From positions 653,263-717,262 of the forward strand of contig NIVC01000283.1 in assembly GCA_002269645.1 (NCBI GenBank): 64,000 nucleotides of DNA, given 5' to 3'. The notes under the pieces were generated by a model. It was not told the DNA's origin. It saw only the letters and a program-made list of their open reading frames with translations, and made no database searches. Shown here piece after piece: positions 41,362 to 63,710 of this stretch; position 1 is the stretch's first letter; every line of letters starts with the position of its first letter. The translations under genes were made by a program, and so were the position numbers. The DNA comes from Macrostomum lignano (Eukaryota).

Positions 41362-44300
41362 ATATGCACCCCAGCTAGCAATAGCTGCAATATGAATTTA
41401 AACATTTAAACACTGGTTTTCAAATAAAATTAACATTTTAAATAAATATAAATTAAGGAAATTTATAGTTGACTTTTAAAAAAGGGTTTTTCATATTGTA
41501 TAGCCAAAAACCCAAATAGTCCAGACCATGGCAATGTAGTTAATAAAACTTCCTAGCTAGTTTCAATGTTATAATGTCTATATTCAATATAAAATATGCA
41601 TATGGAAATAGAAATACATATTAATATTTCTATATACAAGCACTTAGCTAATCTAGTTACAAAATCAACCAACCTTCAATTCTAAATCAAAAAGAAAATA
41701 TGTACATTTAAAGAAAGCTTTCAATTTTATAATAAGGAAATAAAAAATAACAATTTGATTCTAAGCCCTATATTTATCTTATTTCAAGGCATTAGTAATG
41801 TATAATTTTTTTGTTTTTTAAAAAGCAAAATATTCTAATTTTATAAATTGAATGCATTTGACTCTATTTTAGGCCTACTAATAAATATAAATAAACCACT
41901 AGGCTTATGTTACTTTTAGAAAATACTGTATCAAAAATATTATTAAAGCATTCAATATTTTGTCTTGAAGTCAATATCATTGAAACTTGAAAGAGTGACC
42001 AAAATTATTATTACGTAGAGATAACGTACAGAGACAACAAATAGTCTTTATCTTCATTACATTAATTTACCAGAGCAAATACTATAATTAATATAATTTT
42101 ACAATAGGCTTTTATATAATTAGCTATTCCTATCCTAGACATTTATTATTTTGCTACAAATTATGATTATCTACTATTTAATATAAACCATATAATTTTT
42201 TCTGGCGATCTTCCAGTTTGTTTTGCAATATTATTTTCGAGTTTTAAATGGTACATCAATCAGTCAATGTAATGACACGCCAGAAAATGATGTCTATGGC
42301 CAGAAGGAATGCTTTAATGATTTAATAATAATTTGCTTTAATGAAAAGATACTAGACCTAGGGCCAAGGTCTATGTATTTAAAACTCTATTCAATGCAAA
42401 TTAATGCTTTAGCCTTTATGTTTAATTTATTCAAAAGAGATTAATTGAAAACATTGTCTGAAAGCAAGGTAGGCCCTATTTAAATAATTATACATTTATT
42501 ATTAATTATATGCGGTGGTAGATGGTATTGTGGCAGTGGGATGCCACTGATCGGTGGAAAACATTAACTGAAATTTACGTAACATTGTGGCAGTGGGGTT
42601 GCCACCATTTAATAATATTGTGGTAGGGTGAGCCTCCCACTTGAACTTTTGAAAATGTAATCTTCCCCGTTTCTGGTCGTAATTTTGTCGTGTTCCGGGT
42701 CTGGCCCTCCTATGTCCACCTTATGGTGCTGCCCTACGTCACCCCTTCCGTCATCTCCCGCTCCCCGGTTCTGGCCCTGGGTCCCCTGGTTCTGGCCTTT
42801 GTGCCCTTTTTTGTGCTCTTTAATTTTTGCCCATTTTCCCAATGTAATTTTTCTTTGGTACATATTTATGACCTCATGGTCCAGTGAAATTTAAAGTTTC
42901 TCTTTTTCTGTTCGTTAATGCCAAGATTATGTACCATTAAAATACTATAAATATTGCGCAGGGGGGTGCTAGAATTTCACTCCTGTTTGTTACTCCGTTT
43001 TTGTTTTACTCCGTTTAGTTACTGTTTTAATCCGAGTTCAATCTGCTTTATCAACCTTATACTCTTTAGCCTATATTGATAGTAACTAATCTCATTAATA
43101 ACTGATTATTTGTAATCGCTCTCGCGGCACCACCTGCCTTCATCAATCGTCGTTTAAATAAAATAATAATAATTTAGTTAGTTGTCATCCGTTTCAATAA
43201 CTTAATAAGCCAATTAATTATCGTTAATTAATCAAGACCATAGCTTATCTTGAGTCATTTGCCCGTGGGGCGTAAAATAACCCAGTCTCATCTCGAAGCA
43301 AGCTCTGAGACTATCAACGTTCCGAAATACGCAAATTACGGTGGTGGCAGCGCTACTCTACTGTTAGTAACACAACAAGAATACGAGGTACATTGAGTTT
43401 ACGGTGTCTGAGGACCCGCATCTGAACGCTCGCGCCAAGCACAGACCGCTCGCCTACGACTAAACTACCCCCCCCCCGGGATTGAGGACCCCGGCAGACG
43501 GAGCAACTACAAGTCGTTCTATTGGGATTCGTTCACCAATTTTCCGGATTCAATTCGTGCGAGATAACGACGGCGCCAATTCGAAGGCCTGAGCCGCAAA
43601 CACTCGACTTCCAAACAGACGAACACCGGACAGATATTCTCCCAACGACCACCCGCAAATCTAAATCGCCCCCCACCTCAATATTTTAATAATTTTTCTA
43701 TTTTTAATTGCGTGCCATCTTTTCGTAAGTTTCCAACCCTTGCGGCCAACGGCAGACGGTGACCTCACCCTTTTCCCCCCGGTTGGCCCCGTGTTTGGAC
43801 CATTGGTTGTTATAGATTTTTCCTTAGTTGGTCAATATAATTTTCATTGGTTGAGTTTTAATAATTTTGTGTGTATTTTTGCGGCTTTTGTTTTATAACC
43901 TGAGTGTGGACCCGTGTGTGGCCCCGGTGTTGATAAGTCGTGGCCCCACACCTGGGAATTTAATAATTTCATTGTATAAATAAGTGTGTTTTCGGTTGAA
44001 TTTCTTAATCTTTACCTTCCCCCCGTTTTTCGTCTTCCATTTTTGTTTTAGTTTCCATTGTTCTCGCTCGCGCTTGTGTTTTCGTGTGTTTCAGTTACAG
44101 TTTAATTCATCCTTAGTTTATTAGCGCACCGGCGTCCACGAACTCATTTTCGTCTGTAGCTTAATTTTTCTTAACAATAATAACCTGCTTGAATTAGTAA
44201 CTTTCTTTGCGTTAATAATAAACAGACGGTCAATTAATCAGTTAATACCTATCCAGTTAATATAAGCCATAGCCTATCTTGAATCCTTTGCCCGTGGGGC

Positions 44301-45765
44301 GTAAAATAACCAATCAGTCTCAACTTAAAGAAAGCTCTGAGACCATTAAACGTTCCGTAATACGTAAATTACGGTGGTGGCAGCAACTACCCTACTAAAA
44401 GTAACGAGTTCAACACTTCGACGCATTAATTCACGGAGGCAGAAACTCCGGAGTTCCTACAACTGAACGACCGTGCCGCTCTACGACCGCTCCGCTACGA
44501 TTACAACTACCCTCTCCCCGGACTTGAGAACCCGGCAGTCGGAGTAAAAGGGGAAGAATTTCGTTGTGATTCGTCCCCAGTGGAAAAGACAACGTTGATC
44601 CAACGGTGTTTCAACGGAGGTATGTCACAAAAGCGTTGGGAACAAAAAAGTTTGTCTTTGTACCCAAAATGGCCCGTAAGCAATTAAAAAAGCTTTTATT
44701 TTGCTTACTGAGCCAATATTTCATTTTTTGAAGTGCGTTGTGAAACCGTTGTAAAACCGTTGTGATTGCTCTTCGTTGAATTGCCGTTGTTTCTCAACGG
44801 TAAACCAAATTTCCCAAAAAGACTGTGAGTAAAACTGAGGTCAGGGAATTGTGTAATAACTCTAGAACTAAGTTGGATTTGCTCTACACAGTACGTATTA
44901 TGTAAAGTGTTTTCTTTTTGGCAACTACTGTGCAGTTTTTTGTTAATAATTAGTAGACAAAATTGGTTTGATAAACTTATATGTTGCAAAGCATCACGAC
45001 GCACGTCTATTTTACATAGTACCAATATTGTTTTGCAATTTCTGTTTGGAGCAGGAGAATGTGGATTTTTGTCATACTTGTTATTTTGATGGTCTGTTTA
45101 GCATATAGTTTCCTCCGATTTTCATGCTCACGTGTTTTATTTTGTGGATGGCTTGTATTGCAGATCCTTTGCAAACTTCACTTTTGAATTAGCTGGCTAG
45201 CTATCTTTTTATGTCATTATGATTAACTCACATGCTATGCATGTTTCAAAATTGTTTTTTCTTTTTTTTAGTTGCATAAATGTACACAACACACATGGCT
45301 TGGCAACAGTGGAAGTGCAATGCCTAATTGTTCTTTGCAATTTAACCCAGCAAGCATGACAGTATATAGCTTTACCTTTAACCCACTATATCTTTACTTT
45401 ATTTAGGGCTTTTATGGGCTATAGCCTAGGAACATATCAATTATTAGCTACTATGTGTGTGTAGATCAATTCCTCAAATGCCAGGTAGATGCTGTGTTTT
45501 CCTTGTTATATATTTGCTATATTTGTATAACTATTTTGTATTGTAGGCCATATTACTATAGCTATGTCATAGCTATATATATTAGCTATAAATATTTATA
45601 TGCTTTAGCTAGTGCCTGTGCAGTGCCAGGTATATATAGAAATAAAAGAATGTAATTGTTTATAATTATTCATGGTAAATATAGTATGAGTATAGTATAG
45701 TATTATTTGCCAATTACTATAAGATATTGTGATATAAATGATTTTACTTGTGAATTATTTTTCAG

Positions 45766-47682
45766 ATGTCCAAACGTAACTTTGCTAGAAAAGTGCTTCA
45801 GGGTTGTTTAGAGGAAATTGAAGTAGAGCAGCTTCAAAAAGCATCTGAACCCATTAACCAAGATCAAGCCCAAGGCAATAATCATCAACAAGATGAAGAA
45901 TTCATTCAAGCTGAAGAATACGACACTGACTTTCTTGGCAACAGTCAGGGCAATCCAATGGATAATAGTGAATCAGATGAAGACCTTGTAGAAGAGGATC
46001 AAGATATACCTGAAGTTGAAGATGCTACGCCAGAGCTAACAATTGAGCAAGAACTGCTTCTATTTTATATACTTTTTAATGTGTCACGCTCTGCTATGGC
46101 TTGGATCCTTGCCTTTTTAAATCGCAAGGGTATTTCAGTTCCAAAGTCTGTATATGGCTTGAAAAAGCATTCTGCTAATTCTTCTTATTATTCTATTATT
46201 GCTACTGAAGGAGACTTTTTCTATGTATCAATGGCCAAAAATTTGGAATTTTGTGTTAGCAATAATTATTTTGACTTTTCAAAATGCATTACTGATTCTG
46301 AAACTGGGCACATAAAAGTAAATTCCATTTTCAGTATAGATGGAATGCCCTTGTATAATAGTTCTTCCATGTCAGCTTGGCCAATTTTAATGAAAGTATC
46401 AGGCTATTTGCGTCCATTGCCCATTGCTATTTTTGTTGGTAAAAGTAAACCATCATTGAATATTTTGTTATCACGCTTCTGTGAAGAGCTAAACATTTTT
46501 TTTAGTAATGGTATTCAAGTTCTTGGCCACCATTTTAAGTTAGTCCGTGCTCTTTTTGTTTGTGATGCCCCTGCTCATGCTCATATCTGCTCTATTATGA
46601 ACCATAACTCTCGCATGGGATGTAGTTATTGTCAAGCTGAAGGTAGATATTTTGCTAATCGTATTGTTTTTTCATCTTCTATTGGTACTTTGCGAACTGA
46701 TCAGTGCTATGCTGATTCTAAAGAAAATAACCAGAAGGTAGGGCATTCAACACCTTTGCTGAGTATTAAAAATATTGGTTTTTATTCTCATTTTCCACCT
46801 GACTATCAACATGCTGTATGTTTAGGTGTTTGTAGAAAAGTTTTTAATTTTCTTTTTTCATCTAAGTTTGGTTCATCTTGTAAGATTTCAGCACTAAAGT
46901 TAAAAGAGCTGTCTGATTTTATTGATAGCTATGCCAAGTTCACTCCTGCTGAGTTTCAGCGGAGGCCTCGCCGTATTGATACAAATTTAGCTCACTTTAA
47001 AGCAACTGAGTTTCGACTCTTTTTGCTATATTTGGGGCCTTTTTTCTTCAGAAAGTTTTTACCACAAAAATACTATGACCACTTTCTTCACTTGCACTTT
47101 TGTATCTATGTTTTTTGCTCTGATGTCCACCAGACTCTCTTACCAAATGCTCATCGTTGTATTGAGATTTTTGTTAAGGAAATGGAGTCATTGTATGGTG
47201 AAGCATCAATTTCTTATAACCCTCACACTTTGCTCCATCTTTATGAATTTGTTTGTCTATATGGAAAACTTGACAATTTTTCTGCATTTGACTTCGAAAA
47301 CTATTTGGGGCATGTTAAAAGACGAATTTCAGTTACCCGCTTTGCTTCTAAGCATATTTTGCACCAGTTTTTTAATGTCCGTGCTACTCTTACAAGTGAT
47401 CCAGCTAGTATTGTGTTTTTTTCTAAGAAGTCTCCAAATAATTGTGCAGTTGTAAATGGAGTTCCAATACTCATTAGTACAGTAGTAGGAAATGTCCTAA
47501 CTGGTCATGTGTTAAAGTTTTCGCATCCTTTGTATACAAGTCCATATTCATCAGAAATTCTGAATATTGGATTTTACCATGTGACACGTAATGTTGTTAC
47601 TGGTAATGCAAGCAGAAAGTGCTTCTTGTTGCCATCATCTGGAGGTGAATATATAGTAATTCCCTATTGTTGCGCTATTTGA
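45766..47682 (+). CDS. CMC/EnSpm-type DDE transposase, 638 aa, uninterrupted ORF
   Basis: Motifs SIDGMP (D1), VCDAPA (D2), GCSYC, PPDYQHAVCLGV, KATEFRLFLLY, SYNPHTLLHL and SAFDFENYLG (E), characteristic of CACTA/Mirage-type transposases. Lies inside the TIRs. Confidence 0.9.
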   Translation: MSKRNFARKVLQGCLEEIEVEQLQKASEPINQDQAQGNNHQQDEEFIQAEEYDTDFLGNSQGNPMDNSESDEDLVEEDQDIPEVEDATPELTIEQELLLFYILFNVSRSAMAWILAFLNRKGISVPKSVYGLKKHSANSSYYSIIATEGDFFYVSMAKNLEFCVSNNYFDFSKCITDSETGHIKVNSIFSIDGMPLYNSSSMSAWPILMKVSGYLRPLPIAIFVGKSKPSLNILLSRFCEELNIFFSNGIQVLGHHFKLVRALFVCDAPAHAHICSIMNHNSRMGCSYCQAEGRYFANRIVFSSSIGTLRTDQCYADSKENNQKVGHSTPLLSIKNIGFYSHFPPDYQHAVCLGVCRKVFNFLFSSKFGSSCKISALKLKELSDFIDSYAKFTPAEFQRRPRRIDTNLAHFKATEFRLFLLYLGPFFFRKFLPQKYYDHFLHLHFCIYVFCSDVHQTLLPNAHRCIEIFVKEMESLYGEASISYNPHTLLHLYEFVCLYGKLDNFSAFDFENYLGHVKRRISVTRFASKHILHQFFNVRATLTSDPASIVFFSKKSPNNCAVVNGVPILISTVVGNVLTGHVLKFSHPLYTSPYSSEILNIGFYHVTRNVVTGNASRKCFLLPSSGGEYIVIPYCCAI

Positions 47683-47988
47683 TTATGATTATACTATTGT
47701 CTTCTGGTACTAAGTCAGTCTTGGTCAATATAGCAATTTCTTTTTTCATGCAACTGTCATCCTAGGGTGTGCAAGTGTACATTTTTCATTATTTGTAGCA
47801 TTAAATGTCTCCTTGTGTGTTCAGCTTGTTTATAAATATAAACACAAATATACATATAATATGAATAACAATTTTTTTATTTTGGTTTCAGACAATATGA
47901 ATTTCTTTATTTGATGTCACAAACATGTCATGTATATATTTCCAACATATTCCCATTATTAAGAGTATTTCTATTTCTCATTTCAGCC

Positions 47989-49984
47989 ATGAAGTTTATC
48001 GTGATCTTTCACGTTGACAAAGAAATAGTCGAATTGAGCGAGACTGAAGTCCTCTTAGAAAACTTCCAAAAATTCACTCTGGACAACTGGCGAAACTTTG
48101 TTGGCGAGCCTATTGCAAGGGCATACTACAATGAGCAAGTATGGGACTGCACAATTCTTCAGGTAACTGCACGCTTTATTCCCTGAATGTTCCCATAATC
48201 ATACTTGTATATGGGGGTCGTTTGGTATTTTTGATTTTCACTAAGTAATTTTGCATTTGCGCTAGGTTCTCCCTGACGACGATTATGACGCCACTGGGAC
48301 GGTAAATTGGCTTCGGGCGTTCAGGCGCGAGAAGCACTGCAAAATCCAAACTCTTTTGGGACTGGTCAAACGAGTACCCGATGGCAGGAGGCAAAGATTC
48401 CTTCCTTTGGAGGTTAGCTACAAACCGTTTTTGTTGCTATAAGTGTGTATTAAAACTTCGAAAGATGTTAACCATTTGTAACCATTAGTCATTATTATTC
48501 AATCGATCTCACGAACTACGTTACTATAAGTAGCGCGCAATCATTCTCAGAATCTGCAGACCGAGTCCGAGTCTGACTGCCAACGATCGCCCTCAAGCTT
48601 CTCACGGTCGGTTAGACTACCCCAAGCTGAGGATTCCGCCAGGGCAGTTCAACAAAGCCCAAGCTCGCTGCCGCTGTTGCCTTTGCCGGAGACAAGAAAC
48701 CCATCGGCTCAGCTAGCGGTTGAAACAGCTCCACCGGAAACGCCCAAATCACTGCCCCACCATGGACAGAACGACAGGTGCAGGTCACAGCAGAGTGCGG
48801 CTGAGTTGCTCAGCCCTTCGGATCAGCCAGGAGCCTTGCGTTTCAATGCAGCTGCAGCTGACGTCGCGTCATTGAACTTCGGTACCGGGGGGCTTGACTT
48901 GCTGAAGGCTAGAATGGAGGCTAAGCTTGGAGTCTCTCTGACATCGCCTCTCGGACTGTGCTACCTGGGGCTCCATACCCTTCGTCGGACATCAGCTTGC
49001 ATGACAACAATCTCAGAATTGAAGCAGTGCATGTCGCGTGCCGCTGCTGCTGCTGCTACTACATTTGGTCCAGTTGATGCAGATGCAGAATGGAAGCCGA
49101 TTGCGACCTGGCCTGACTACATTGACTTCATCAAAAATCCACCGGCTCTCGAATGGGTATGTACATCCAATAGTTTAGTGTTTGTTTTTGCAAAGTCTAT
49201 TATTTCAAAAAGCCTCCGACAGCATGCTTTCACGATAGTTGGAAAATATAATTGTCTCTGACATATTCCACATTTTATTTCATATTAATATTCCATATTT
49301 CTTCGTGACTGTCCATCTACATGTATGATAAAATTATTGGCACCCTTGCAGATGACACGGCTGCTGCTGCCCTGCAAGGCTGACGACCTTGGCAGCACCA
49401 TTCGCCGAATGGTGAGGCGAATTCTGTCACCAGAGATGCTGGCCGCTGTCAATTATAACGGAAAGGGTCTTGGTGCTCTCTCTGGCTCTGAGCTTGGGGA
49501 CACCGAACTTGCCTTTCGATCGGTGTTCTTGCCCAGTATTCTACGTAAGTTCAATGCGCGTGTGTGTGTGTGTGTGTGTGCATATCACATTAAATTCAAT
49601 GATCGAAATTAATTACTGAGTATACTGATTCTTAATTCATTTGATTTACGTATTGATAGGTTTTAAAATCAGACGGCCTATTAGTTTTAGATCAGTTATG
49701 TTTAATAATTGTATTTTTGTGACATACTTTTAGGGACGATGAAGGCAATGTACCGCGATGCTGCTGAGCGTCCAAAAGACCGCGATGTAGAGCTTGCAGT
49801 CATTGCTGCGCTGAAGCTGGGCAAGGACGGGCGAAGTCGTGGACGTCAAGGTCCGACGGAGTCAGGCAGCCAGGCGTCGGCAGCCAGAGTTGGCACATCG
49901 CAAGACCCTCCGCCTGCCAAGGTTCGACGTTCCGTTCAGAAGGTCCCTGACCCTATCATTTACGACGCTGACAGTGATGAGTGA
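47989..49984 (+). CDS. Transposon accessory gene, 5 exons (47989-48162, 48266-48412, 48551-49156, 49352-49544, 49734-49984), 456 aa, C-terminal BEN/DUF4806-like domain
   Basis: All four introns are GT-AG and the spliced frame (1371 nt) is open. The C-terminal 'GSTIRRMVRRILSPEMLAAVNYNGKG...RTMKAMY...DRDVELAVIAALKLGKD' resembles the DUF4806/BEN-like helical domain of animal EnSpm second ORFs (judged by eye). Confidence 0.72.
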
Positions 49985-52900
49985 CTGGTTTGGAGTCATA
50001 ACCTGTGAGCAGTACAATTTGAGATAATCAGCAGGCTAGAATGGGATATTGATCGTATGTTGTGTCAATTTAGCTACTTAGCTTATGTGCAGTACAATCA
50101 TTGGACACAGTCAGTTAGTTATTATTCAAAAATAAAGAAATGATTTATAAAAAACGTTGTTGAAGCCATCATATCATCCTATAAACAAGTAATTTAGTTT
50201 GCAATAATTGCCAATGATTACACTTATACCTAACCCTGAGACTTTAAACGCGTATGCATGCGAGAAATTTTTTTGCTTTGCTGTAATTTCATTTGACAAA
50301 TATATAGATCTTTGCCAAATGTCTCAACTTTAAAATGTAACGTTTTTGGACACATGAGTGACATGACACATTTGATTGCGAAAATTGGCTTTTTTCATAC
50401 TTTATTTCACGTGGATCAGCACCTCTAACAATATTTTGACCGTTGGAATAGCGTTGATTCGCAGTTGGACTGCCGTTGGTAAACCGCCGTTGTATCAACG
50501 GATTTTCCTCCAGACACGCCCAACGGAGGGCCAACGGAGGGCAACAACGTTGAATCAACGTTGGTTTTTCCGCTGGGTCTGCGCGATTTTCCGGTTTTTA
50601 TTCGTGCGAACGCAACGCTACCGGTTTCGAAGAATTACCGGCCGACCTCCAATATCAAATTTTGTTTTATCTTCTCCACCCCCACCTCAACATCCCCGGG
50701 ATTTTACCCGCCCCCTCCAAACCCGGGATTTTTGTCGTCATTTCTTCCAACCTCCGGTGTGAGTTCTCCCTCTCCTGTCCTTGGCCCTGTTTGTCTTGTC
50801 GATGTTTTTGCGTTTTCTCCCCATTTGTCCCTGTGCTTTTCTGTCTGGTCCATGCCCGGTGTCCTGCCCTTGTCACCTTTTCTCCTCTCGCTGCCCTTCT
50901 CAACGTACTACTTAAACATTGTGCTCAGCGCGTTTTTTTGCATGCCTTTCCTCTTTCCCCTTCTTCTTCCCTCCCTTTTCCGCTTTTACTATTATTCTCT
51001 TAGCTTGATCCTCCGTCTTAACAGCCTTGCGTTTAATAGTTATTTTGCGTGAATAGTTAAAATTCATTGGTGCGTGAGTAGTTTAGTCGCCAAGTTACAG
51101 TTTTTCTTTTAATAGCCTGTGCCTCCGGCACCCGTGGAGAAACCTCGTCAGTTATTCAGCCTGCAAATTTAACAATAATAATAACCGAAGTAAACTGCAA
51201 CTTAATAATTCTATTTATTTTTCCGTTAACTTTAAGCCTTAGTCTCTCTTGAGTCATTGCCCGTGGGGCGTAAAATAACCAAGTTCTCATCTCAAAGAAA
51301 GCTCTGAGACTTACTCGTTCCGTAATACGTAAATTACGGTGGTGGCAGCAACTACCCTATTGAAAGCAACAAGCTCAGCAAATCGACACATTAATTTACG
51401 GTGTCAACAACCTCCGGTGTTTCATCGCTTTGAACGACCGCGCCGCTACACGACCGCTCCGCTACGATTACGACTACCCTCCCCCCGGACTTGAGAACCC
51501 GGCAGTCGGAGTAAAAGGAGAAGAAATTCGTTGAGATTCGTCTGCGCGATTTTCCGGAGTTAATTCGTGCGAACTCAATGCCGTTCGGGTTTTCGAAGAA
51601 ACCCAACATTTCAAACCCACCAACTTTCAAATTTTTTCATTCTTCTCCACCCCCACCTCAGTATCACCACTGATTATTTTTCGAAAATTGATTTTAATAA
51701 CAATAACATTATGTGGTAGGGCGATCTACCACTGACCGACGAACGTGATGGCGCCGTGTGGTGACACTTGCTCATGACTCTCTGTTTTTCCGTCACTCGG
51801 TGCGCCATCCCTTGCCCGATCCCTCGCCCCATCTTTTGCCGTTGCTCAATTTTTTTGTTAATTCCCGTTTGCGGCTTTAGTGTCGTCCGCTGCCCCATCG
51901 TCTGCCCCATCCTTCGCCTTCCTGCCCCATCTGTTGCCCCATCCCTGTCCGGACGACATTGTTTCCCCTTTTATAAGGCCATTTCGGGCCGCCTTTTGGT
52001 TTTTTCGCGCGCGCGCGTTTTTTTCCGTATTCGTCGTTCTTCTTCGTGTAAACTCCGTGGTTTGTGCTCGTTCATTAGTGTTTGAGTTTATCCAGTTTCT
52101 GTTTAGTGTTTATAGTTTTTGCCTCCGCTAAGTAAGTTTTAATAGTTTCGCTTAATAGTTAGTCGTTCGGCACCCGGCACCGGCCGTGGACATCTCGTGA
52201 AATTAATATTAATCTCTAATAACTACCGCTTGCGCAATTAACAATAATTATTAATAATAATTTACTAGTTGTTCATTTATCGAAGCCCTTGACAGTTTAT
52301 CTTGAGTTATTTGCCCGTGGGGCGTTAAACAACCAAACTCATTTCATCTCCGAACGAGCTTTGAGGTCTCAACGTTCCGTAATACGAAATTACGGTGGTG
52401 GCAGCGCTACTATACTGATAGTAATCAGCTCAACAACTCAGAAACAGATTTACGGTGTCTAGACCATTGAGTCTACAAATCTGAACGACCGGGCCGCTAT
52501 ACGACCGCTCCGCTACGATTACGACTACCCTCCCCCGGACCTGAGGACCCGGCTGTCGGAGTAAAAGGAGAAGAAATTCGTTGTGATTCGTCTGCGCGAT
52601 TTTCCGGCTTTATTCGTGCGAACTCAACGCCGGCGGCAATCCAAACGGGAATCCGCCCCACCTCACTGGTGTCAGCAAATTTTCAAAGCCGCCCATTCCA
52701 AGAAAATTCTTCTCCACCCCCACCTCAATTATCTGGACATTAAAATTAAGCTCGCCCCTTTCTGGCCCCCATTTGTCCACCCCCTGGCGCATATATGACG
52801 TTTTCTGCCCTCTTTCTGTTCTCCCCGCCCCATTTTCTGGCTTTGTATGCCCAATTTATGGTTATTTTGTTTTTCTGTGTATTTTCTGCGGTATTTTTTT

Positions 52901-54096
52901 GTTACCTCTTTCTGGACTCTAGTGTTTTCGCCTTCCCCATTTTCTGGGCTATGTCGACCACCTTGTGTCCTTCGTTTTGGGGTATTTAACCCCGCCCCTT
53001 GCGCCTGTCTCTCCCTAGACTTCTGCTTTTCCATGCCTTTCTTTCCTTCCGATCCCTTTCTCCCTTTCTGACCCCCCCCTATTCTGCTAATCAACGTTAA
53101 ATTAACTTTTATTAATTTTGCTCAACCGGACAGTTACTTAAGTTTAGTTTAAGTGAGAGCCCGCACCGCGGCACCCCAGTCATTTGAATCGTTAGTCGCT
53201 GCTCGAGTGTGAATACAATAACTTGTTTATAATAACTTTGTTTACCGATTAATAAATAAGCAACAATTATAATTTGTCTTCTACGTTCTGGATCAAAAGC
53301 CATAGCCTATCTTAAGTCATTTGCCCGTGGGGCGTAAAATAACCCAATCTCATCTCAAAGAAAGCTCTGAGACTTCAACGTTCCGTAATACGTAAATTAC
53401 GGTGGTGGCAGCGCTACTCTACTAACAGTAATCAGTCAAGCAATCGAAGCGCATTAACTACGGTGTCTGAGGACCCTCTCTGAACGCTCGCGCCTAACAA
53501 AAACCGCTCGTCTACGACCGAAACTACCCTCCCCCCGGAATTGAGGACCCCGGCAGTCGGAGTATCAGGAGAAAATTTCGTTGAGATTCGTCTGCGCGAT
53601 ATTTCCGGATTTAATTCGTGCGAATTCAACGTCGGCGGCAGTTCAAAGTTAATATCACCCAATTCATTTGTGTCAGCAAACCAGCCAAATTCACCGCCAA
53701 AGTTTCCAATTTTTTTTCAACACCCCCCCTTTTTTCTCCGCCCCCACCTCATATATATCACTAAATCGGACCTAGTTGTAACGATGTTGATATTTAATTT
53801 TTAAAAATAATTTGATATTAAATATGTCTCTTTAGTATTATATTAATTTATTTACTATTCATAAGCGAATTTTAAAGTATTCAATATTGTACGCTTAAAA
53901 TTTGTTTTACTGTGTCCTTCATAGACATACGAGTATTGTTATATTTAAAAGACGGTTAAATCGCGATTTTGCGCTCAATTTTCTTGGGCCTCGTGCGTGC
54001 TTTTTGGTTGGTCCGCCGCCTGGTGCCTGTTCGCTATAGCTTACCACCAATAATTTAACGGCAATAGGTTATCCGGTCTGTTCAAATAAATAATAC

Positions 54097-56312
54097 TATA
54101 GCTTTTTGCAGCCCATTTGGGCTTACGCGCATTGAATTTAATCCAAGATATGTTTGTCAAAGTAATGGAGCTTTTGTCTATGGTAGCAAGGCTGGCACAG
54201 CGGCATTTAATTTGGTCCAACAAGCACCAATTTGGTCCATTTAGTTCATTTGCAGCTTAGTCCCAGAATTGTGGACCATATGCTAGGCTGTTGAACGAAT
54301 GTCATTGGCTTGTGATCGAAGCACTCGACGGAGGTGAACACGAAGGAGGTTATCAGATTTCGACTATCAGCAGAGCTCTGGAAAAGCTGTAGCGTACTTT
54401 AATGACTTTCCCGAAATTTCTTCAGATTTCTAAAAGTCAAAAACTATTTCCAGAAACTTCTTTGAGTTAGCAGCTAATCTATAACATACGCATATAAATA
54501 GTAAATAATTAATTATCACTTAAGTATTAATGTTCTAATTATATTTACGTAATGTATATAATTAAAGGGTTATTTCGCTTTGTTAAAATTAGCTAAATCT
54601 TTCTAGAAATTTCCGGAAGACAATAACAAAGCTATAAATACACGGCGGCGGCAGTGAAACAAATCACTCGCTCTCCCCTTGTTTTCTCTTTGATCTAAGT
54701 TCCGTTGGTAAATAACTAAATGAACCACCGCCTTGCTCTTATTCAATAATCAATTAAAGAAATTCTACAATGGTCCGGTGAGGCGTCGAGCGATCTCTTT
54801 CAGAATGCGTGTGCATACGCACGCCCGTGACCGCTCATCATGCCATCATTCGCGATCAGCACCGCCGTCGCTACCAACGCCGAAACATAGCACACCACTG
54901 TCTACTGCCCAGCGTCATCACTTCTCAGCGTGTCTCCCGTCGCCGTCATGTAATATAAATTTAGCTAAACCGTCGCCAACCTCCCTGTTCCCACATCTAA
55001 AAACGACACGGTATCTCGTCGGTGACCAAATAAACTACGCCTACACGGGCTCACGAACGGCCATCCGATCGAGCCATCCGCGCAGCTACATGTATGACCT
55101 CCACGTATACGTACCAGCGACATCAACCGCAGCACCGCGCAGACGCGACGTTAGCACTGGGTCTCATCCATCGCGAAGAACTCAATTAGCAATCCACAAT
55201 AAACCGGCTGGCACCACTGGCGAGTCTACACATTGCAACCTACTACGAGGTTCCTCGATAAGCCGGTGGTCAACCAGCTGGCCTAACCCGGACGACACCC
55301 ATGAATCTTCTCGGTTCTGTTTCAGCCGCAGAGCGACTACCCGCCTTGATCCCTGGCGCCTATCCGTAGTTCGGGAGTCGTCTGTCTGCAAACCGGCAAT
55401 AACCCGCAGGTCGTTCCAAACTACAGCGACAAACCGCCATCCTGGAGCAGTGCCGCAGAGATCACGGACTTGTTAACCGCCATAATGTACAATCAGTCTG
55501 AACTCCTCGACCGCAGTGCAAGCCCAGCTGCCCCTATCCGTCTCGCGGTGAACCCAGTCGTCATCTGTATTAATTTTCAGCAGCGTAATTTCAACCTGGA
55601 CTTTATTCACGGTAACCCAGCATCTAATTAACATTAATTAACCGTCATACTTAGGGACTCCGTCTCCCGTGGGGGGAACTGTTGTAGCGTACTTTAATGA
55701 CTTTCCCGAAATTTCTTCAGATTTCTAAAAGTCAAAAACTATTTCCAGAAACTTCTTTGAGTTAGCAGCTAATCTATAACATACGCATATAAATAGTAAA
55801 TAATAAATAATCACTTAAGTATTAATGTTCTAATTATATTTACGTAATGTATATAATTAAAGGGTTATTTCGCTTTGTTAAAATTAGCTAAATCTTTCTA
55901 GAAATTTCCGGAAGACAATAACAAAGCTATAAATACACGGCGGCGGCAGTGAAACAAATCACTCGCTCTCCCTTGTTTTCTCTTTGATCTAAGTTCCGTT
56001 GGTAAATAACTAAATGAACCACCGCCTTGCTCTTATTCAATAAACAATTAAAGAAAATTCTACAAAGCAACTTAAAATTTTTGGTAGAGACGCTGACATT
56101 CCAGCGGTGCGCAACAACCTGCAGACGGTTGAGAGAAGGCAAGAGTTTGTCAAATGGCTCACGAGTGTTTGGACCAAATGGATGCTTTTTGAACCAAATT
56201 AAATGCCACTGCGCCAGCCTTGCTACCATAGACAAAAGCTCTGTTACATTGGCAAACGTATCTTGGATTAAATTAAAAGCGCGTTAGCCCAAATGGGCTG
56301 CAAAATGCTATA
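54097..56312. mobile_element. Non-autonomous DNA element with long (~140-150 bp) imperfect TIRs, host of the TRIM insertion
   Basis: 54097-~54240 (TATAGCTTTTTGCAGCCCATTTGGGC...AATTTGGTCCA) is the inverted complement of ~56170-56312 (...GCCCAAATGGGCTGCAAAATGCTATA). TA at both termini. Confidence 0.75.
54388..56064 (+). mobile_element. Miniature non-autonomous LTR retroelement (TRIM-like), 1677 bp; LTRs 54388-54769 and 55683-56064
   Basis: Two 382-bp near-identical direct repeats TGTAG...CTACA (about 5 differences by eye). 4-bp TSD AAGC. PBS-like TGGTCCGGTGAGG at 54771 and PPT-like GGGGGGA just before the 3' LTR. No recognisable gag or pol. Confidence 0.9.
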
Positions 56313-56341
56313 TTAAATACAATCAGTCAAAGTTCAAACAT

Positions 56342-56373
56342 AAGACTCTCTTGTTACGAAGACTCAATTTATT
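56342..56373 (+). other. Degenerate spliced-leader (SL)-like sequence
   Basis: AAGAC-TCTCTT-GTTA-CGAAGACTCAATTTATT. 17 nt are exact to the Macrostomum SL as recalled (CCGTAAAGACGGTCTCTTACTGCGAAGACTCAATTTATTGCATG). Lacks the terminal GCATG. Confidence 0.55.
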
Positions 56374-58322
56374 ATTGATAGTGCATAGCCGTCAGCACCG
56401 AACAAAGAAGGGTCGCGTCACATAGTGGCATATGCAGGGGGCAAACGAGCCTTTGAAATATTAGCAGGAGAGTGTGGCAGGCGAGGCCGCTACTTGTCCG
56501 CCGGACTCCGCTCCACCCGATGTATGTCACTGTGCGGAATTACTAACTCGGTATTTGCATTTGCGCCATCCTGACGTCATCGAAATTTTTACTCTTAATG
56601 TAAACTTCCTTCCCACTGCCTGTAGTAGTAAGAATTTGGCTCAGGCAATTAGCCTGTTAGGCCAATATATTATAGGGCAATGTATTTGGAGAAATTTTCG
56701 AAATAGAAGTTTAGACGATTCGACGTAGGGTCGTTCTCAAAGCTAGGTCACATGTGCTAGGCCGGTCTACCACTGGGGTGAACGACGGCAGGCCTCCAGC
56801 GCGGACAACGGCGGGACGACCAGCTAGACTCCATCGGATGACGGTTGACGTCATGCTTTCAATGTTTGTTCCCATGTTTGTTCCCCCGGTTGTCCCCGCC
56901 CTTGCTCCTTCGTCTGCTCCTTTCGCTGTTCCCTCCCGTGGCCTCTGTTGTTTTAGTGCTTTGAAGTTTTTCCCTTTTCCTTCGTTGTCCTTTCCCTTGT
57001 CCCATCCTTTGTCCTAACCCCTGGGTTATCCTTGCAAAATTAATATTTACAACGTTGTTGTTGGAACCTTTTGCTCATGCGCTTTGCTCGCTTTGCTCTT
57101 TACTTTACTTTTGTTCTCTGACTTTTGAATACTGACTTGACGAGTCTGCTGTTAATATTTAATTTGCGTTTAACTAGAACAGCCTTCTCGACTAAGCGCT
57201 TGTAATTTATTAGCTCGCCCTCGGCACGGCCGAATCCATCTCTCGAGGTTTTTCTTTTAATAGTTAACAACAATAGTAATAACAATTTATCTATTACTTT
57301 AATAATAGCGATAATATTTAGTTCCAATAATAATAATTGCTTATTCAGTTGTTCTTAATCGAAGCCCCAGTCTCTATTGAGTCATTTGCCCGCGGGGCGT
57401 AAAATAACCAATCAGTCTCAACTCAAAGAAAGCTCTGAGACCCTTATCGTTCCGTAATACGAAATTACGGTGGTGGCAGCGCTACTTTACTACTGACAGT
57501 AACAAAACAGCATTTCGACAGTTTACGAATTTTACGGTGTCTGAGGACCCATTCTGAACGACCGGGCCGCTACAAGACCGCTCGAATACGATTACGGCTA
57601 CCCTCCCCCCGGAATTGAGGACCCCGGCAGACGAAGTATCCAAGGAGAAGAATCCACACATCATTCGTGAAATTTTCCGGGTTAACGAGTGCCGAGACAA
57701 CACGGCGGAAATTCAAACGTAGAATCCGCCCCACCTCACTGGTGTCGACCAACAATTCAAACCGCCGAATTCAAACGCCGCCCAACAAATTTCTTCTCCA
57801 CCCCCACCTCACACAACTTTTTGTTATTGAAAAAAAGTTTGTACATGGACCAATGATCGTACAAAAAAATTTATTTTGACAATTTCTATAAGAATCTGCT
57901 ACTAAAACCACAAGAAAACTTAAGTATGAGAAGAAATCAATCTATTTGTTAATCTTTGTTACGGAAGACAACGACAAAATATTTTAGAAAAAATGGATTT
58001 TTACTAAATTTTTTATTTAAAATACGCAGTTTAATTTCTTTCGCAAAAATAAAAGAACAAGAAATCGACTAAGGAAATGTTTTTGAGCACAATATTTTGT
58101 TTCTCTGCTCTTAATCCCAAACATAATTTATCGTGTGCAAGAAATCAGTGCGAAATTATTTAGCATGCACTCGAAAGGATTTCGATCTGTTTAACTTAAT
58201 CAGTGAATTTAGAAGTCTTACGTCTTAAAAGGTTGAATTTAGAAATACAGTTTACAGTACATATCTTTTGAAAGTCAAGGTGATTCGACCAATTAAGAAT
58301 GTTAATTTTTACGTTGAAAATA

Positions 58323-58903: not shown

Positions 58904-59950
58904 TGTGGTGATCCAGCATTGCTAGCATAGGCTGCTCCTGGGATCCCCTCTTAGCCACAGTCATTTAGTGCTTGGGCTGTAGCAGTGGGAGCTGGGCATA
59001 GGGCCTGTGCGCTTGCAGCGCTCCCGTCCCTTCCTCCTCTTCCCTTGTGCAGGCTCAGGTGTGCAGCTGTCGCGGGACAGGGAGAGAAACTCTCTCCCCC
59101 TCTCCCCCTAGCGCAGTCTGCAATGGGCTAAAAATAGAAACATTAGTCAGTGGGATATTTCTCCCTAGTAGTCTTAGTTAGTCAGCGGGAACGAGAGCAT
59201 AGCTCTCCGCCCGGGGTAGGCTCTCGTGGGGTCTTAGTTGCACTCCTTGCATGCTGCAACATGCAAGCAGTGTACCAGTAGGCCATGCGGAGGCCTCGTG
59301 ATGAGGCAGATGTCTTATGGACATCTCCAAGATCGTTCCTGGCTCCGGGTAGTCCACGGAACTGCCATGGAATCTGCCACGGAACTGCCTCTGAGCTTCC
59401 CATTGGCCCTGAGACCCCCAGATTTTAGTATAAATACAGAGTAGGTGAAGGCCCAAAAGAGACCATCTCGCTCTCGATCTTCGGATCCTCGTCTTCCGAT
59501 CCTCGTTCGGAGACTGCCTGCTTGGCTTCGAGCAAGAGCTAGTATTCCTATATGCTTTTCCTAGACTAACTAGCTTAGGCAAATTCGCTAGACGCTTTTC
59601 CTAGGGATAACCAGCAAGCAAACATTTGTTGCAGCTGCCATTGCTCGTTAAGACTGCCGCAGGCCTTTTGTGTCTTCAGCTCGCCAGACCTTCAACACCG
59701 TCTGGACCTGGTCTGGTGGCCTACATCCTACGCTGTTGGGCAACATCAGCGACACCTCATAGGCTTACGGATTGTTACTGCGACACCAGTTGAGCAATTA
59801 AACGATATTTTAGGATCGGCCTGTGACCGTTATTCACATTAATAAACGTTAACTGACTTTGTCTTGTCTTATTCATTCTCTACTTAACAGTAGGCCTACC
59901 TAGGGACAGCCTGTCAAGGATATTACCTGTAGACCTACAAGGTGGCAGCA
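58904..59950 (+). mobile_element. LTR-like segment (TGTGG...CTACA, ~1036 bp) followed by degenerate PBS AGGTGGCAGC
   Basis: TG...CA ends, TATAAATA at 59429, AATAAA at 59841, and a PBS-like motif of the same type as the array. No second LTR or TSD was found. Confidence 0.55.
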
Positions 59951-61222
59951 ACCCAACTACCAACTCGGTTTAATATCTGATTGTAACTTAATAGAGACTA
60001 AGGGTTCTCGGACCATAGTGATAGACCACTCAGGCCAGCTACCTGCCGTGCTAGTTGTTGAGGACAGACAGAGTGTGCTAGTAGGCAGCAGCAGTAGTCA
60101 TCAAAGAGTAGGAAGCGCAGGCATCACACAATATACTAAATCTCTAATAATTACTAAAAATCTACTGGCTTAACTAAAATAGTTAAATTCGTTTTATGCG
60201 AAATATTTCTCACATTGAGAAAAATGAGGTTGTGTGAGATGTAAAAATGCAAATGAGCATGCAGGAAACAGAGCAAACAAAAATAATGTAGGTAAATGTG
60301 TGAAAAAATTTCGCATAAAACGAAGAATGACACTGCACATGCACATTTAATATAAGAAGGAGACATAATGCGCACACTGAAACACCAGTAGCAATGGCGC
60401 CCAAACCTTTGATGATCAAAAGCGAGCTCTCGTCTGCCTCTCGTTGCGCCCCCAGACCCATGCAAATAATCAAACTTATGATCAAACTATACATGGTTTC
60501 CGTCCCTCGCTTTGAACCCGAATAACAATCGGACGCATCAGATAGGTCTCAAATACGTTTCAATAAAATCGAACGAACAGATATGTTTTTCGTGTTTAAA
60601 AGGTACTTAAAATTACTTTTTATTATGGTGCCAAACAAATTCAGTCATTTTAATACTTTAAAACAGACATTTTTTAGTATTTAAAAGCTACGTTTTTGGT
60701 AACGTCACAGTAACTTATCAAGTTGAAGTAAAAGGTACGTATTGGTGGCAGGCGGGATGCCACGGTTGAAATCTGAACTTTATAACAATAACTGCATGCG
60801 AAAATAATTTTTTAAAAAGTTCCCCATCCGCTGATTTTTTTATTTCTCTCGTCCATCGCTAGTTCTATTCCTCTTCCCGTCCATGGACTGAATTCGTCCC
60901 TTCTCTGATTTTTGCCGTCCCTGATTTTTGTAACGTCGTGTGGGTCGGTCGTATGTATGTCGTACAGACTCTCTGATTCAGATTCATATTCATATCAATA
61001 TCAATTAGAAGCCACAGTTATGCGGATTATTCTATCCAGTATAATATGACTTTAGTTTAGTATCTTCAGTGTACATTCTTTAGTCACAAATGTTAAATCA
61101 TATTTGTGAATGAGGTAATAATAGTAATAGCTAGTTAAGCAAATTTATAAAAACAGACTAGGCCTGTAGCCCTTATCATTTTATAATTTATGCACAATAC
61201 ATTTTACGGTAATCTTGAACTT

Positions 61223-61243
61223 CGTAAAGACGGTCTCTGACTG
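61223..61243 (+). other. 5' half of spliced-leader-like sequence
   Basis: CGTAAAGACGGTCTCTGACTG is 20/21 identical to the recalled SL 5' half, then switches abruptly to unrelated sequence. Confidence 0.55.
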
Positions 61244-62414: not shown

Positions 62415-63426
62415 AACAATCTTGAACTTTATAGTTCAATAAAATGCTTTAAATTTTGTGGAAAACATTTTTGCATATCCTAATATCTTTCTTCTGAATT
62501 CCCAAATGGCAATAATTATGTGAGTTACTCAATTGGAGCTTTGCTGTTGTTACCAATCACTAATTATTTGCCGTAACCCTTCTTGTAGAGGAAGTATTGT
62601 GCTAGTCGGGCAGAAAATGCTGTCAAACTAATGCTGAAAATGCTGATATTGACAGCAAAACCTTCCGTTTTGTGCCAATACAATATGGAAGGTCGAAGAG
62701 GGGGGGGGGAAGCAAAAACTACCTGCGCCAGTGGCCGACTGTGCAATCGGTGAGTCTCTTAATTTGCGTTATTTATTTTTTAAATAAAGACGTATAGTTG
62801 TGGCAAAATCTAAAATCCAACTTTTCAGGAATCGTGCTGGACTCAAAATCACTGCGACGTCAGTTAGGATGCGTCGGTGCCCGTTCTTTTATCGCAGCAT
62901 TCTAAAACGAATGATGCGGAAATCGAAATGTGACAGACAGATCGACGACGACGCAGACGTAGAGAGCGACTAATAACTCCCCCGGCTTGCCTGTCAGGCT
63001 TGACGTTTTATTCGCCGACGTAGTCCGACTTGGTCGGCCAATAAAATCTTTTTGCTACGTCTCTTTAAAGAGGAAAGAAATTGCATTGCTCAGTGAAAAT
63101 TCTCAGTTGCTAATTTTTCACTTTCGCCTTTGTTATTTGTCAACGTATCAGTTCCCCAAAACTGTCAAAAAAGTCCGACATTTCAGTCAAGCAGCCAGGT
63201 CACGTGATTGCAAAACTCAAAAGTGCAAAAAGTAAGAGCAATATGCCTGTGGTGGATTGTCATTATTAAGGTCTCATAGAAGTCACCTGGGACCGTCCCT
63301 GGACGTCTCAAAATTACATATCGGATACGTATCTACAACTATCAAAAGTACTATCCCTGGGACGAGACTTTGGGAATTCAGGGGGTCGTCTCCGATACGT
63401 ATCGATACGAAATTTTGCGTTACGGG

Positions 63427-63710
63427 TAACAAGCTCAGCAAATTTACGGTGTCTCATCATTTGAACGACCGCGCCGCTACACGACTGCTCCGCTACGATT
63501 ACGACTACCCTCCCCCCAGACTAGAGAACCCGGCATTTGGAGTAAAACAGGAGAAAGGATTTCGTTGTGATTCGTCTGCGCGATTTCCGGATTATTCGTG
63601 TGAACTCAACGCCGGCGGCAATTCAAACGTGGAATTCGCCCCACTTCATTGGTGTCAGCAACTAATTTCAATCAACCCATTTCCAAGAAAACTTTCTCAA
63701 CCCCTCACGT
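63427..63710 (+). repeat. Seventh, 5'-truncated copy of the array core
   Basis: TTTACGGTGTC...GAACGACCGCGCCGCTAC...GATTACGACTACCCTCCCCCC...GATTCGTCTGCGCGATTTCCGG matches the other cores. The first block and the PBS motif are missing. Confidence 0.85.

What the first reader, a model, noticed from the sequence alone, without database searches (positions are those of the whole stretch)
42619..57811. Array of ~1 kb units: conserved structured core alternating with divergent variable segments
Seen: six units (plus a truncated seventh at 63427) share a ~430-bp core, while the ~550-bp segments between them are not alignable by eye apart from a short GGCAC-containing motif and AT-rich tracts. Potential stems are kept while loops vary. 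Examples are TACT-nnn-AGTA (loops GTT/AAA/GAT/AAC/GAC in five units), CCGTAA..TTACGG, GTCTCA..TGAGAC, GCCC-GTG-GGGC and CCGG-n-CCGG. Known: TGGTGGCAGCG is complementary to the 3' end of eukaryotic tRNA-Leu and is a typical LTR-retrotransposon primer-binding site. Some variable segments carry TATA-like and AATAAA-like motifs, as an LTR U3/R would. Unusual: no polypurine tract precedes the next unit (the junction is pyrimidine-rich CTCCACCCCCACCTCA), the putative LTR ends in TTACG rather than CA, and each unit has a different U3-like part. Inference: either an atypical tandem TRIM or non-autonomous element multiplying by an unconventional route, or a locus collecting 5' ends of related LTR families (a piRNA-cluster-like repeat/spacer archive), or an array of structured ncRNA genes each with its own promoter. 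This is the best candidate for an undescribed system in the window.
Basis: partly seen in the sequence, partly recalled or inferred. Interest (0 to 1): 0.85.

Follow-up and report, generated by a model that had tools for sequence, protein, structure and literature searches.

The report
Nested solo LTRs mimicking a tandem array
The apparent array of 1-kb repeats is a stack of retrotransposon long terminal repeats (solo LTRs) from related flatworm (Macrostomum lignano) Ty3/gypsy-type families that inserted one into another, which is an ordinary kind of genome debris with a few curious details.

Summary
The repeated core and the very divergent segments are real. The region is not a tandem array, though. 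Each ~1.0-kb unit is a separate integrase-type insertion. It has TG…CA ends, a 6-8/10 terminal inverted repeat and a perfect 4-bp target-site duplication (6 of 6 units).

Five units form a nest: A in B in C in E, and D in E. The 5' stubs of E, C and B lie at 42511-42618, upstream of the reported start. A sixth unit (F) stands alone, and U7 is a fragment. The long gaps are other transposons.

The organism is Macrostomum lignano. One of its gene models carries the core-derived peptide both before gag-protease-integrase and after it. The units are therefore best read as solo LTRs of related Ty3/gypsy-type families: a fast-evolving 5' part with a TATA-like box, provisionally U3 and R, and a conserved 3' core, provisionally R/U5.

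Rfam gives no match, and the core stems show no covariation. The tandem-TRIM and ncRNA readings are not supported.

Three details remain unexplained:
- a strongly conserved hairpin plus tRNA-Leu-complementary 11-mer lies inside the LTR, and an unrelated solo LTR nearby has a similar module;
- all four nested insertions hit the first 65 nt of their host LTR;
- every orientable transposon in 42-64 kb is on the + strand.

The parts
42511..53751 (+). Solo LTR E, the outermost host of the nest. Its own sequence is 42511-42528 + 51665-51711 + 52732-53751 (1085 nt). TSD TATA at 42507-42510 and 53752-53755.
   Evidence: One search shows the TG...CA ends and the identical 4-bp flanks. In one search the rebuilt element aligns end to end with the others. 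In one search the 5' palindrome, rebuilt across the 9-kb insertion, folds (z -2.8).
42529..51660 (+). Solo LTR C, inserted 18 nt into E. Its own sequence is 42529-42585 + 50694-51660 (1024 nt). TSD GTAT at 42525-42528 and 51661-51664.
42586..50689 (+). Solo LTR B, inserted 57 nt into C. Its own sequence is 42586-42618 + 43685-44575 + 50580-50689 (1034 nt). TSD ACAT at 42582-42585 and 50690-50693.
42619..43680 (+). Solo LTR A (1062 nt), inserted 33 nt into B. TSD ATAT at 42615-42618 and 43681-43684.
   Evidence: Terminal inverted repeat 8/10.
51712..52727 (+). Solo LTR D (1016 nt), inserted 65 nt into E. TSD ATTA at 51708-51711 and 52728-52731. It is the closest relative of the LTR of the M. 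lignano gag-pol model P0121.
   Evidence: In one search, 52466-52561 translates to a peptide 90.6% identical to P0121 aa 216-247.
56753..57811 (+). Solo LTR F (1059 nt), not nested. TSD CACA at 56749-56752 and 57812-57815.
63427..63710 (+). U7: the 3' part of an LTR of the same group, lacking the 5' ~700 nt and the 11-mer.
   Evidence: 85% identical to D over 250 nt.
60744..61222 (+). Possible 5' fragment (G) of a further related LTR. It begins with the terminal palindrome TGGTGGCAGGCGGGATGCCAC.
   Evidence: In one search the palindrome folds (z -2.3). In one search it aligns in register with C positions 2-175 (z 3.7). The evidence is weak.
44576..50577 (+). 6.0-kb DNA transposon inserted in LTR B. 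TIRs CCCAG[T/C]GGAAAA, 2-bp TSD TC, 638-aa transposase-like ORF at 45766-47682. It is not part of the repeat units.
   Evidence: In some searches a second copy in M. lignano contig NIVC01000027.1 is 99.7% identical over exactly these bounds and has a 2-bp TSD. One search finds homologues with DUF4218 or transposase names.
43314..43365 (+). Most conserved block of the core, given here for unit A. The same block lies at ~44346, 51311, 52367, 53375 and 57442 in the other units. It comprises the hairpin CCGTAAT-N6-ATTACGG, then TGGTGGCAGC(G/A) (tRNA-Leu 3'-end complement), then a short stem that pairs the 11-mer with CTAC(T/C).
58904..60128 (+). Solo LTR H (1225 nt) of a different family. Ends TGTGGTG...CATCACA, TSD CAAT. 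It carries an internal ...CCTACA-AG-GTGGCAGCAAC..ACTACC module 188 nt before its 3' end.

Best explanation
The region is a cluster of solo LTRs in the flatworm Macrostomum lignano. They come from several related Ty3/gypsy-type LTR retrotransposon families.

Shown: each ~1.0-kb unit is a separate integrase-mediated insertion. It has TG...CA ends, a short imperfect terminal inverted repeat and a 4-bp target-site duplication. Five units are serially nested, in the same orientation, within the first 18-65 nt of the host LTR. Reading along the strand this gives 5' stubs, then whole units, then the remainders of the hosts, which looks like a tandem array.

Inferred: each insertion arrived as a full-length element and was later reduced to a solo LTR by LTR-LTR recombination. 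The variable 5' ~600 nt is U3 plus part of R. It holds lineage-specific short repeated motifs, a TATA-like box and an AT-rich AATAAA-like tract, and it evolves fast. The conserved 3' ~430 nt is R/U5, which lies in the 5' leader of the genomic RNA and is constrained.

The tRNA-Leu-complementary 11-mer with its hairpin lies inside the LTR. It therefore cannot be the primer site that defines the present LTR boundary. It is either a retained older LTR/PBS boundary or an accessory tRNA-binding or structural module.
For: - Ends and TSDs: 6 of 6 units have ends defined by homology and identical 4-bp flanks: ATAT, ACAT, GTAT, ATTA, TATA, CACA. The chance expectation is about (1/256)^6.
- Terminal inverted repeat: 6-8 of 10 positions match in every unit.
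- Nest reconstruction: removing each inner insertion restores full-length units that align from the first base to the last. It also restores E's 5' palindrome and the conserved CCACTGA box across 9 kb.
- A bona fide two-LTR element in the same window (54388-56064) also has a 4-bp TSD. So 4 bp is what LTR integrases give in this genome.
- Organism: the embedded DNA transposon ORF is 99% identical to a M. lignano protein.
- Link to an autonomous element: profile search with the translated core found M. lignano protein A0A1I8GNL1, here P0121. The core-derived peptide occurs at aa 210-247, directly before gag, Asp protease and Integrase_H2C2. It occurs again at aa 1791-1838, after the integrase. 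The two copies are 31/32 identical. This peptide derives from sequence downstream of the 11-mer, so that sequence is present at both ends of the element.
- Background: M. lignano is known to hold many Ty3/Mdg4 families of the Mag, CsRN1 and Gmr1/Osvaldo clades, and solo LTRs (PMC12801592).
- No Rfam family matches and the core shows no covariation.
Against: - No full-length copy with these LTRs could be read as DNA. P0121 and P0123 have no contig on record. The LTR status therefore rests on a chimeric gene model at protein level. Its second core copy could in principle belong to an adjacent nested unit rather than to a 3' LTR.
- All seven copies in the window are solo or fragmentary.
- The hairpin plus 11-mer is the most conserved block of the unit. 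That is unexpected for a mere fossil.
- U3/R/U5 borders are inferred from motifs only. No transcript data were available.
Confidence: 0.75

Rival explanations
1. Each ~1-kb unit is itself a complete non-autonomous retroelement of the form 'LTR + tRNA-Leu PBS + ~330-nt leader + terminal CA'. It is mobilised in trans, and the 11-mer serves as a working primer-binding site.
For: - The hairpin plus 11-mer is the best-conserved block.
- Conservation spans about -105 to +330 nt around it, as around a true PBS and leader.
- The unrelated unit H has a canonical ...ACA, a 2-nt spacer and then GGTGGCAGC inside it.
- No full-length copy lies in the window.
- All copies have the same ~1-kb size.
Against: - With priming at the 11-mer, reverse transcription would give LTRs ending at TTACGG and a two-LTR product. 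No unit has a second LTR or a polypurine tract.
- The terminal inverted repeat pairs the 5' end with the real 3' end, not with the site before the 11-mer.
- Sequence downstream of the 11-mer occurs on both sides of gag-pol in P0121.
Confidence: 0.12
2. A tandem repeat (satellite or tandem TRIM array) made by unequal crossing-over, with selection keeping only the core.
For: Neighbouring cores lie ~1.0 kb apart in two places. Tandem TRIM arrays are known in plants (Wukong, PMC4528315, seen).
Against: - Every unit has its own different 4-bp TSD, and the 5' stubs of the host units are stacked at 42511-42618.
- Tandem Repeats Finder reports no ~1-kb period, although its longest period here is 500 nt.
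- Unit F is isolated in non-unit DNA.
Confidence: 0.02
3. An array of structured non-coding RNA genes, each with its own promoter.
For: Small invariant hairpins in the core and a TATA-like box upstream of each core.
Against: - No Rfam match at gathering score or at E<=1.
- Covariation term +0.78, with 3 of 49 pairs showing a double change.
- The units carry transposon ends and TSDs.
- The core peptide flanks gag-pol in P0121.
Confidence: 0.02
4. The region is a one-strand transposon trap, either a piRNA-cluster-like locus or a long intron of a minus-strand gene. The stacking and common orientation would then reflect selection or retention at the locus rather than a property of the LTR family.
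For: - All orientable transposons in 42-64 kb are on the + strand: LTRs A-F and H, the 54388-56064 element, the DNA transposon ORF and the non-LTR insert at 61223-62417.
- The long ORFs upstream that look like host exons are on the - strand.
Against: - No small-RNA or transcript data are available.
- This reading explains orientation but not the clustering of nest sites within 65 nt of the LTR 5' ends.
- It is compatible with the best explanation rather than opposed to it.
Confidence: 0.09

Closest known systems
Solo LTRs of Ty3/gypsy (Ty3/Mdg4) LTR retrotransposons of Macrostomum lignano (Ustyantsev et al. 2025, PMC12801592)
   Same: TG...CA ends, a short terminal inverted repeat, a 4-bp TSD, a variable promoter-bearing 5' part and a conserved 3' part. 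The core peptide flanks a gag, protease and integrase model from the same species.
   Different: The clade (Mag, CsRN1 or Osvaldo-type) was not determined. The LTRs carry an internal hairpin plus tRNA-Leu-complementary 11-mer 330 nt before their 3' end, which is not a standard LTR feature. They hold no canonical heat-shock elements.
Non-random nesting and 'autoinsertion' of LTR retrotransposons (Jedlicka et al. 2019, PMC6911290)
   Same: Elements insert into older relatives at preferred regions. That study reports a weak preference for palindromes. Here all four nest sites lie in or within 45 nt downstream of a terminal palindrome.
   Different: That study was on plants, and it found LTRs were not commonly targeted. 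Here the first 65 nt of the LTR is hit four times out of four.
Tandemly arranged TRIMs (e.g. Wukong in maize, PMC4528315)
   Same: Repeated LTR-like units about 1 kb apart, with a PBS-like motif in each unit.
   Different: TRIM arrays share LTRs between units and arise by unequal crossing-over. Here each unit has its own TSD, there is no PPT and there is no LTR-internal-LTR organisation.
Target-site preference of Drosophila gypsy for alternating pyrimidine-purine sites (YRYRYR, 4-bp TSD). This is recalled from the literature and was not checked here.
   Same: 4-bp TSDs, of which 5 of 6 alternate purine and pyrimidine (ATAT, ACAT, GTAT, TATA, CACA).
   Different: Different host and probably a different clade. 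The resemblance is a lead only.

Membership tests
LTR of an LTR retrotransposon (solo LTR) | 5'-TG...CA-3' termini with a short terminal inverted repeat | tested here: met
   All six units: TG[T/C]G... and ...CCTCA. 6-8 of 10 terminal positions are inverted-complementary.
LTR of an LTR retrotransposon (solo LTR) | Flanked by a 4-6-bp target-site duplication | tested here: met
   6 of 6 have perfect 4-bp TSDs, all different. The two-LTR element at 54388-56064 also gives 4 bp.
LTR of an LTR retrotransposon (solo LTR) | The same sequence occurs as a direct repeat on both sides of gag-pol in full-length copies | tested here: inconclusive
   Protein level only. The core peptide lies before gag and after integrase in M. 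lignano A0A1I8GNL1, with the two copies 31/32 identical. No DNA was obtainable.
LTR of an LTR retrotransposon (solo LTR) | U3-R-U5 organisation with a promoter and a polyadenylation signal | tested here: inconclusive
   TATA-like motifs at ~260-400 nt in 5 of 6 units, and AATAAA in 3 of 6 with AT-rich tracts in the rest. No transcript data.
LTR of an LTR retrotransposon (solo LTR) | PBS directly after the 5' LTR and PPT directly before the 3' LTR in the full element | not testable with these tools
   No full-length DNA copy is available. The genome of this species cannot be searched with the tools at hand.
TRIM or tandem TRIM | Two LTRs flanking a short internal region with a PBS and a PPT | tested here: not met
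   A unit has no internal direct repeat of its ends. The segment before the 3' end is pyrimidine-rich, not a PPT.
Tandem repeat or satellite | Head-to-tail copies without individual target-site duplications | tested here: not met
   Each unit has its own TSD, and stubs of the hosts lie upstream. Spacing is irregular.
Structured ncRNA gene family | Match to a curated RNA family, or compensatory base changes supporting a fold | tested here: not met
   Rfam gives 0 matches at gathering score and at E<=1. RNAalifold covariation term is +0.78. ARAGORN finds no tRNA.
piRNA cluster | Dense small-RNA production from a transposon-rich locus with one-strand bias | not testable with these tools
   Only the one-strand orientation of the transposons is seen.

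The most novel reading that the evidence does not exclude
These M. lignano LTR families share two real, undescribed properties.

(1) An internal module is maintained by selection. It looks like a former LTR end followed by a tRNA-Leu primer-binding site held in a hairpin. It is seen in two otherwise unrelated LTR families, A-F and H. In D, F and U7 a second, weaker copy, CCCCACCTCA-C-TGGTGTC, lies ~65 nt before the end. This would mean the LTRs grew at their 3' side by downstream shifts of the priming site, or that they keep a second tRNA-binding site with a role in replication.

(2) Integration is directed to the first ~65 nt of a resident LTR, next to its terminal palindrome. This would build pseudo-tandem LTR stacks.
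Probability: 0.2. Interest if true: 0.5.

Novelty: new member of a known kind. Interest (0 to 1): 0.22.

Why it matters
Mainly as a caution. Serial nesting of solo LTRs near one another's 5' ends can pass for a repeat/spacer array with a conserved structured core. Checking for target-site duplications resolves it.

The leftovers are of modest specialist interest. One is an internal tRNA-Leu-complementary hairpin module shared by two LTR families. The other is an apparent preference for inserting just inside the 5' end of a resident LTR. If they hold genome-wide, they would bear on how LTR boundaries shift in evolution and how integration sites are chosen in a flatworm model with very active retrotransposons.

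Tried and rejected
- Rfam at gathering score on the whole window, and at E<=1 on 41.5-64 kb: nothing.
- ARAGORN on the window and on the fetched loci: no tRNA.
- RNAalifold on six cores: no covariation.
- Metagenome scan for AAATTACGGTGGTGGCAGC: three hits, each matching only 19-22 nt. The one contig checked has 57% G+C. I read them as chance matches.
- Profile of the minus-frame translation of the core against the 5.8-billion-protein set: no hit.
- Gag-protease part of P0121 as query: only one further M. lignano protein, P0123, known from UniRef only. Neither protein has DNA on record.
- Other M. lignano loci reached through the DNA-transposon protein, L001 and L005 (45 kb in total): no copy of the units.
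- P0006, P0029 and P0033 came from other assemblies and were not searched for the units.
- Exact look-ups of the window ORFs 45766-47682 and 37235-37999: not on record, so no allelic or homeologous locus could be compared.
- No reverse-transcriptase or integrase ORF was recognised by eye among window ORFs of 110 aa or more. Only 10 ORFs were scanned with Pfam.
- Full-text search for the 11-mer found only unrelated papers.
- Availability of alternating Pu/Py target sites as an explanation for the 5'-end clustering: rejected, because such sites are spread over the whole LTR.

Full report
**What is there**

A search for the core finds seven copies, all between 43.2 and 63.7 kb and all on the + strand. 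Start-to-start spacings are 1041, 6967, 1051, 999, 4074 and 5907 nt, so the region is not a regular array. TGGTGGCAGCG, or a one-mismatch variant, occurs once in each of the six full copies, against 0.7 matches expected by chance.

**Each unit is a separate insertion**

Reading the sequence shows that every unit ends in ...CTCCACCCCCACCTCA. Unit starts of the form TGTGG[C/T]AG... also occur as a stack of three short stubs at 42511-42618, upstream of the reported start. I defined the ends by homology and then compared the four bases on either side. They are identical for all six units:

| Unit | Own coordinates | TSD | Position |
|---|---|---|---|
| A | 42619-43680 | ATAT | 33 nt into B |
| B | 42586-42618 + 43685-44575 + 50580-50689 | ACAT | 57 nt into C |
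| C | 42529-42585 + 50694-51660 | GTAT | 18 nt into E |
| D | 51712-52727 | ATTA | 65 nt into E |
| E | 42511-42528 + 51665-51711 + 52732-53751 | TATA | outermost |
| F | 56753-57811 | CACA | stands alone in non-unit DNA |

Six perfect 4-bp duplications at ends fixed beforehand cannot be chance, at about (1/256)^6. Removing the inner insertions gives six elements of 1016-1085 nt that align from the first base to the last. Element E was rebuilt from three pieces up to 9 kb apart. The rebuild regains the conserved terminal palindrome and the CCACTGA box. The first ten bases and the reverse complement of the last ten match at 6-8 positions. These are the marks of integrase-mediated insertion of LTR-type ends.

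**What fills the gaps**

- 44576-50577 is a 6.0-kb DNA transposon with TIRs CCCAG[T/C]GGAAAA and a 2-bp TSD. A copy 99.7% identical over exactly these bounds lies elsewhere in the Macrostomum lignano assembly GCA_002269645.1. Its 638-aa ORF is 99% identical to a M. lignano protein, which identifies the organism.
- 53756-56752 holds an inverted-repeat element (arms 54094-54239 and 56170-56315). A 1.68-kb two-LTR element is nested inside it.

**Conserved and variable parts**

In the alignment of the rebuilt units:
- the first ~30 nt (palindrome) and the last ~430 nt are conserved, with core pairwise identity of 65-84%;
- the middle ~570 nt align at ~30%.

A shuffling test still finds residual similarity between several variable segments (A-E z 8.6, C-F 6.0). 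They are therefore homologous but fast-evolving, not of separate origin. Each variable segment has its own short repeated C/T-rich motif (for example TGCCCCATC four times in D). Most also have a TATA-like box at ~260-400 nt, then a GGCAC motif, then an AT-rich AATAAA-like tract just before the core. This is what U3/R of diverging LTR families looks like.

**Link to an autonomous element**

The genome could not be searched as DNA. I therefore translated the core and searched protein collections.

The minus frame gave nothing. A plus-frame profile hit M. lignano protein A0A1I8GNL1, here P0121. It is a chimeric gene model. The peptide FTVSRPIESTDLNDRAAIRPLDYDYNYPPP is 90.6% identical to the translation of unit D at 52466-52561. 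It lies directly before a gag, Asp-protease and Integrase_H2C2 polyprotein. It occurs again, 31/32 identical, after the integrase.

This peptide is encoded 60-190 nt downstream of the 11-mer. Sequence beyond the 11-mer is thus present at both ends of a gag-pol element. Together with the TSDs and the terminal inverted repeat, this makes the whole ~1-kb unit the LTR and the copies in the window solo LTRs.

The domain order is protease, then the RNase H end, then integrase, which is the Ty3/gypsy order. M. lignano is known to hold many such families and solo LTRs (PMC12801592). The weak point is that this is protein-level evidence from a gene model. No DNA of a full-length copy could be obtained.

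**The 11-mer**

CGCTGCCACCA is the 3' end of a known human 3' tRNA fragment.

The 11-mer sits ~685-737 nt into the LTR and ~330 nt before its end. It therefore cannot be the priming site that sets the present LTR boundary. Yet together with the preceding hairpin CCGTAAT-N6-ATTACGG it forms the most conserved block of the unit.

A solo LTR of an unrelated family, H (58904-60128, ends TGTGGTG...CATCACA, TSD CAAT), has ...CCTACA-AG-GTGGCAGCAAC..ACTACC 188 nt before its own end. This looks like a former LTR end plus PBS. D, F and U7 also have CCCCACCTCA-C-TGGTGTC ~65 nt before the end.

I read these as retained older LTR/PBS boundaries or as an accessory module. This is inference only.

**RNA structure**

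Rfam gives nothing at gathering score or at E<=1. RNAalifold predicts 49 pairs, nearly all invariant, with a covariation term of +0.78.

The only place with compensatory-looking change is the 5' terminal palindrome. It reads GTGGCA/TGCCAC in B, C and G, against GTGGTAG/CTACCAC in D. It folds in 6 of 7 copies.

**Unexplained patterns**

- The four nest sites lie 18, 33, 57 and 65 nt from the host's 5' end. The chance is about (65/1020)^4, or ~2e-5.
- Five of six TSDs alternate purine and pyrimidine. Such sites are spread over the whole LTR, so site availability does not explain the clustering. Either integration is directed to this end of an LTR, or the left flank of the locus is a hot spot. 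One nest cannot tell these apart.
- The common orientation is less telling, because every orientable transposon in 42-64 kb is on the + strand. The long upstream ORFs that look like host exons are on the - strand. This fits an intron or a one-strand cluster.

**Verdict**

This is an ordinary structure, nested solo LTRs, that imitates a repeat/spacer array. The tandem-TRIM, satellite and ncRNA readings are rejected. The single-LTR mobile-unit reading is kept at low probability.

Noticed in passing
window 54388-56064: A 1.68-kb non-autonomous or internally deleted LTR element. It has 382-bp LTRs that are 98-99% identical (TGTAGCG...TTCTACA), TSD AAGC, a PBS-like TGGTCCGGTGAGG right after the 5' LTR and a G-rich tract before the 3' LTR. 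Each LTR carries four canonical heat-shock elements, and these are the only ones in the 64-kb window. This recalls the heat-inducible M. lignano LTR families of PMC12801592.
   Followed up: partly
window 44576-50577; L001 8808-14810: A recently active 6.0-kb DNA transposon. The two copies are 99.7% identical. It has TIRs CCCAG[T/C]GGAAAA, a 2-bp TSD and a 638-aa transposase-like ORF with hundreds of homologues in animals (DUF4218, weak DUF1258), plus a second ORF.
   Followed up: partly
window 58904-60128: A solo LTR of a different family (H). It has TSD CAAT, TATAAA at 59429 and AATAAA at 59841. It holds an internal '...ACA + GGTGGCAGC' module like the one in the units under study.
   Followed up: partly
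window 61223-62417: A GC-rich 1.2-kb insert flanked by a 12-bp duplication, AATCTTGAACTT, and ending in AACAAACAAAC. It is probably a non-LTR retroposon copy. It interrupts the possible LTR fragment G.
   Followed up: no
window 54094-54239 and 56170-56315: 146-nt inverted repeats, 89% complementary, that bracket the small LTR element. This is probably a foldback or MITE-like DNA element into which the LTR element inserted.
   Followed up: no
window 38069-38631 and 39157-40821: Two minisatellites: a 26-nt unit x 22 copies, and a 33-nt unit x 54 copies at 92% matches. They lie between the nearest minus-strand ORFs that look like host exons and the LTR nest.
   Followed up: no
window 42-64 kb: Every orientable transposon is on the + strand, while the long ORFs at 3.8-38 kb that look like host exons are on the - strand. 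This suggests an intron of a minus-strand gene or a one-strand transposon cluster.
   Followed up: no
window 52556-52570 and equivalents in B, C, U7: GGA|GTAAAAGG in the core looks like a splice donor. The P0121 gene model leaves the LTR exactly there and resumes 12 nt before the gag ATG. The gag mRNA may therefore be spliced from within the LTR.
   Followed up: no
L001 16726-21317: A non-LTR retrotransposon next to the DNA transposon copy. It has a 447-aa ORF1 and a 1083-aa ORF2 with endonuclease, reverse transcriptase and RNase H domains.
   Followed up: partly
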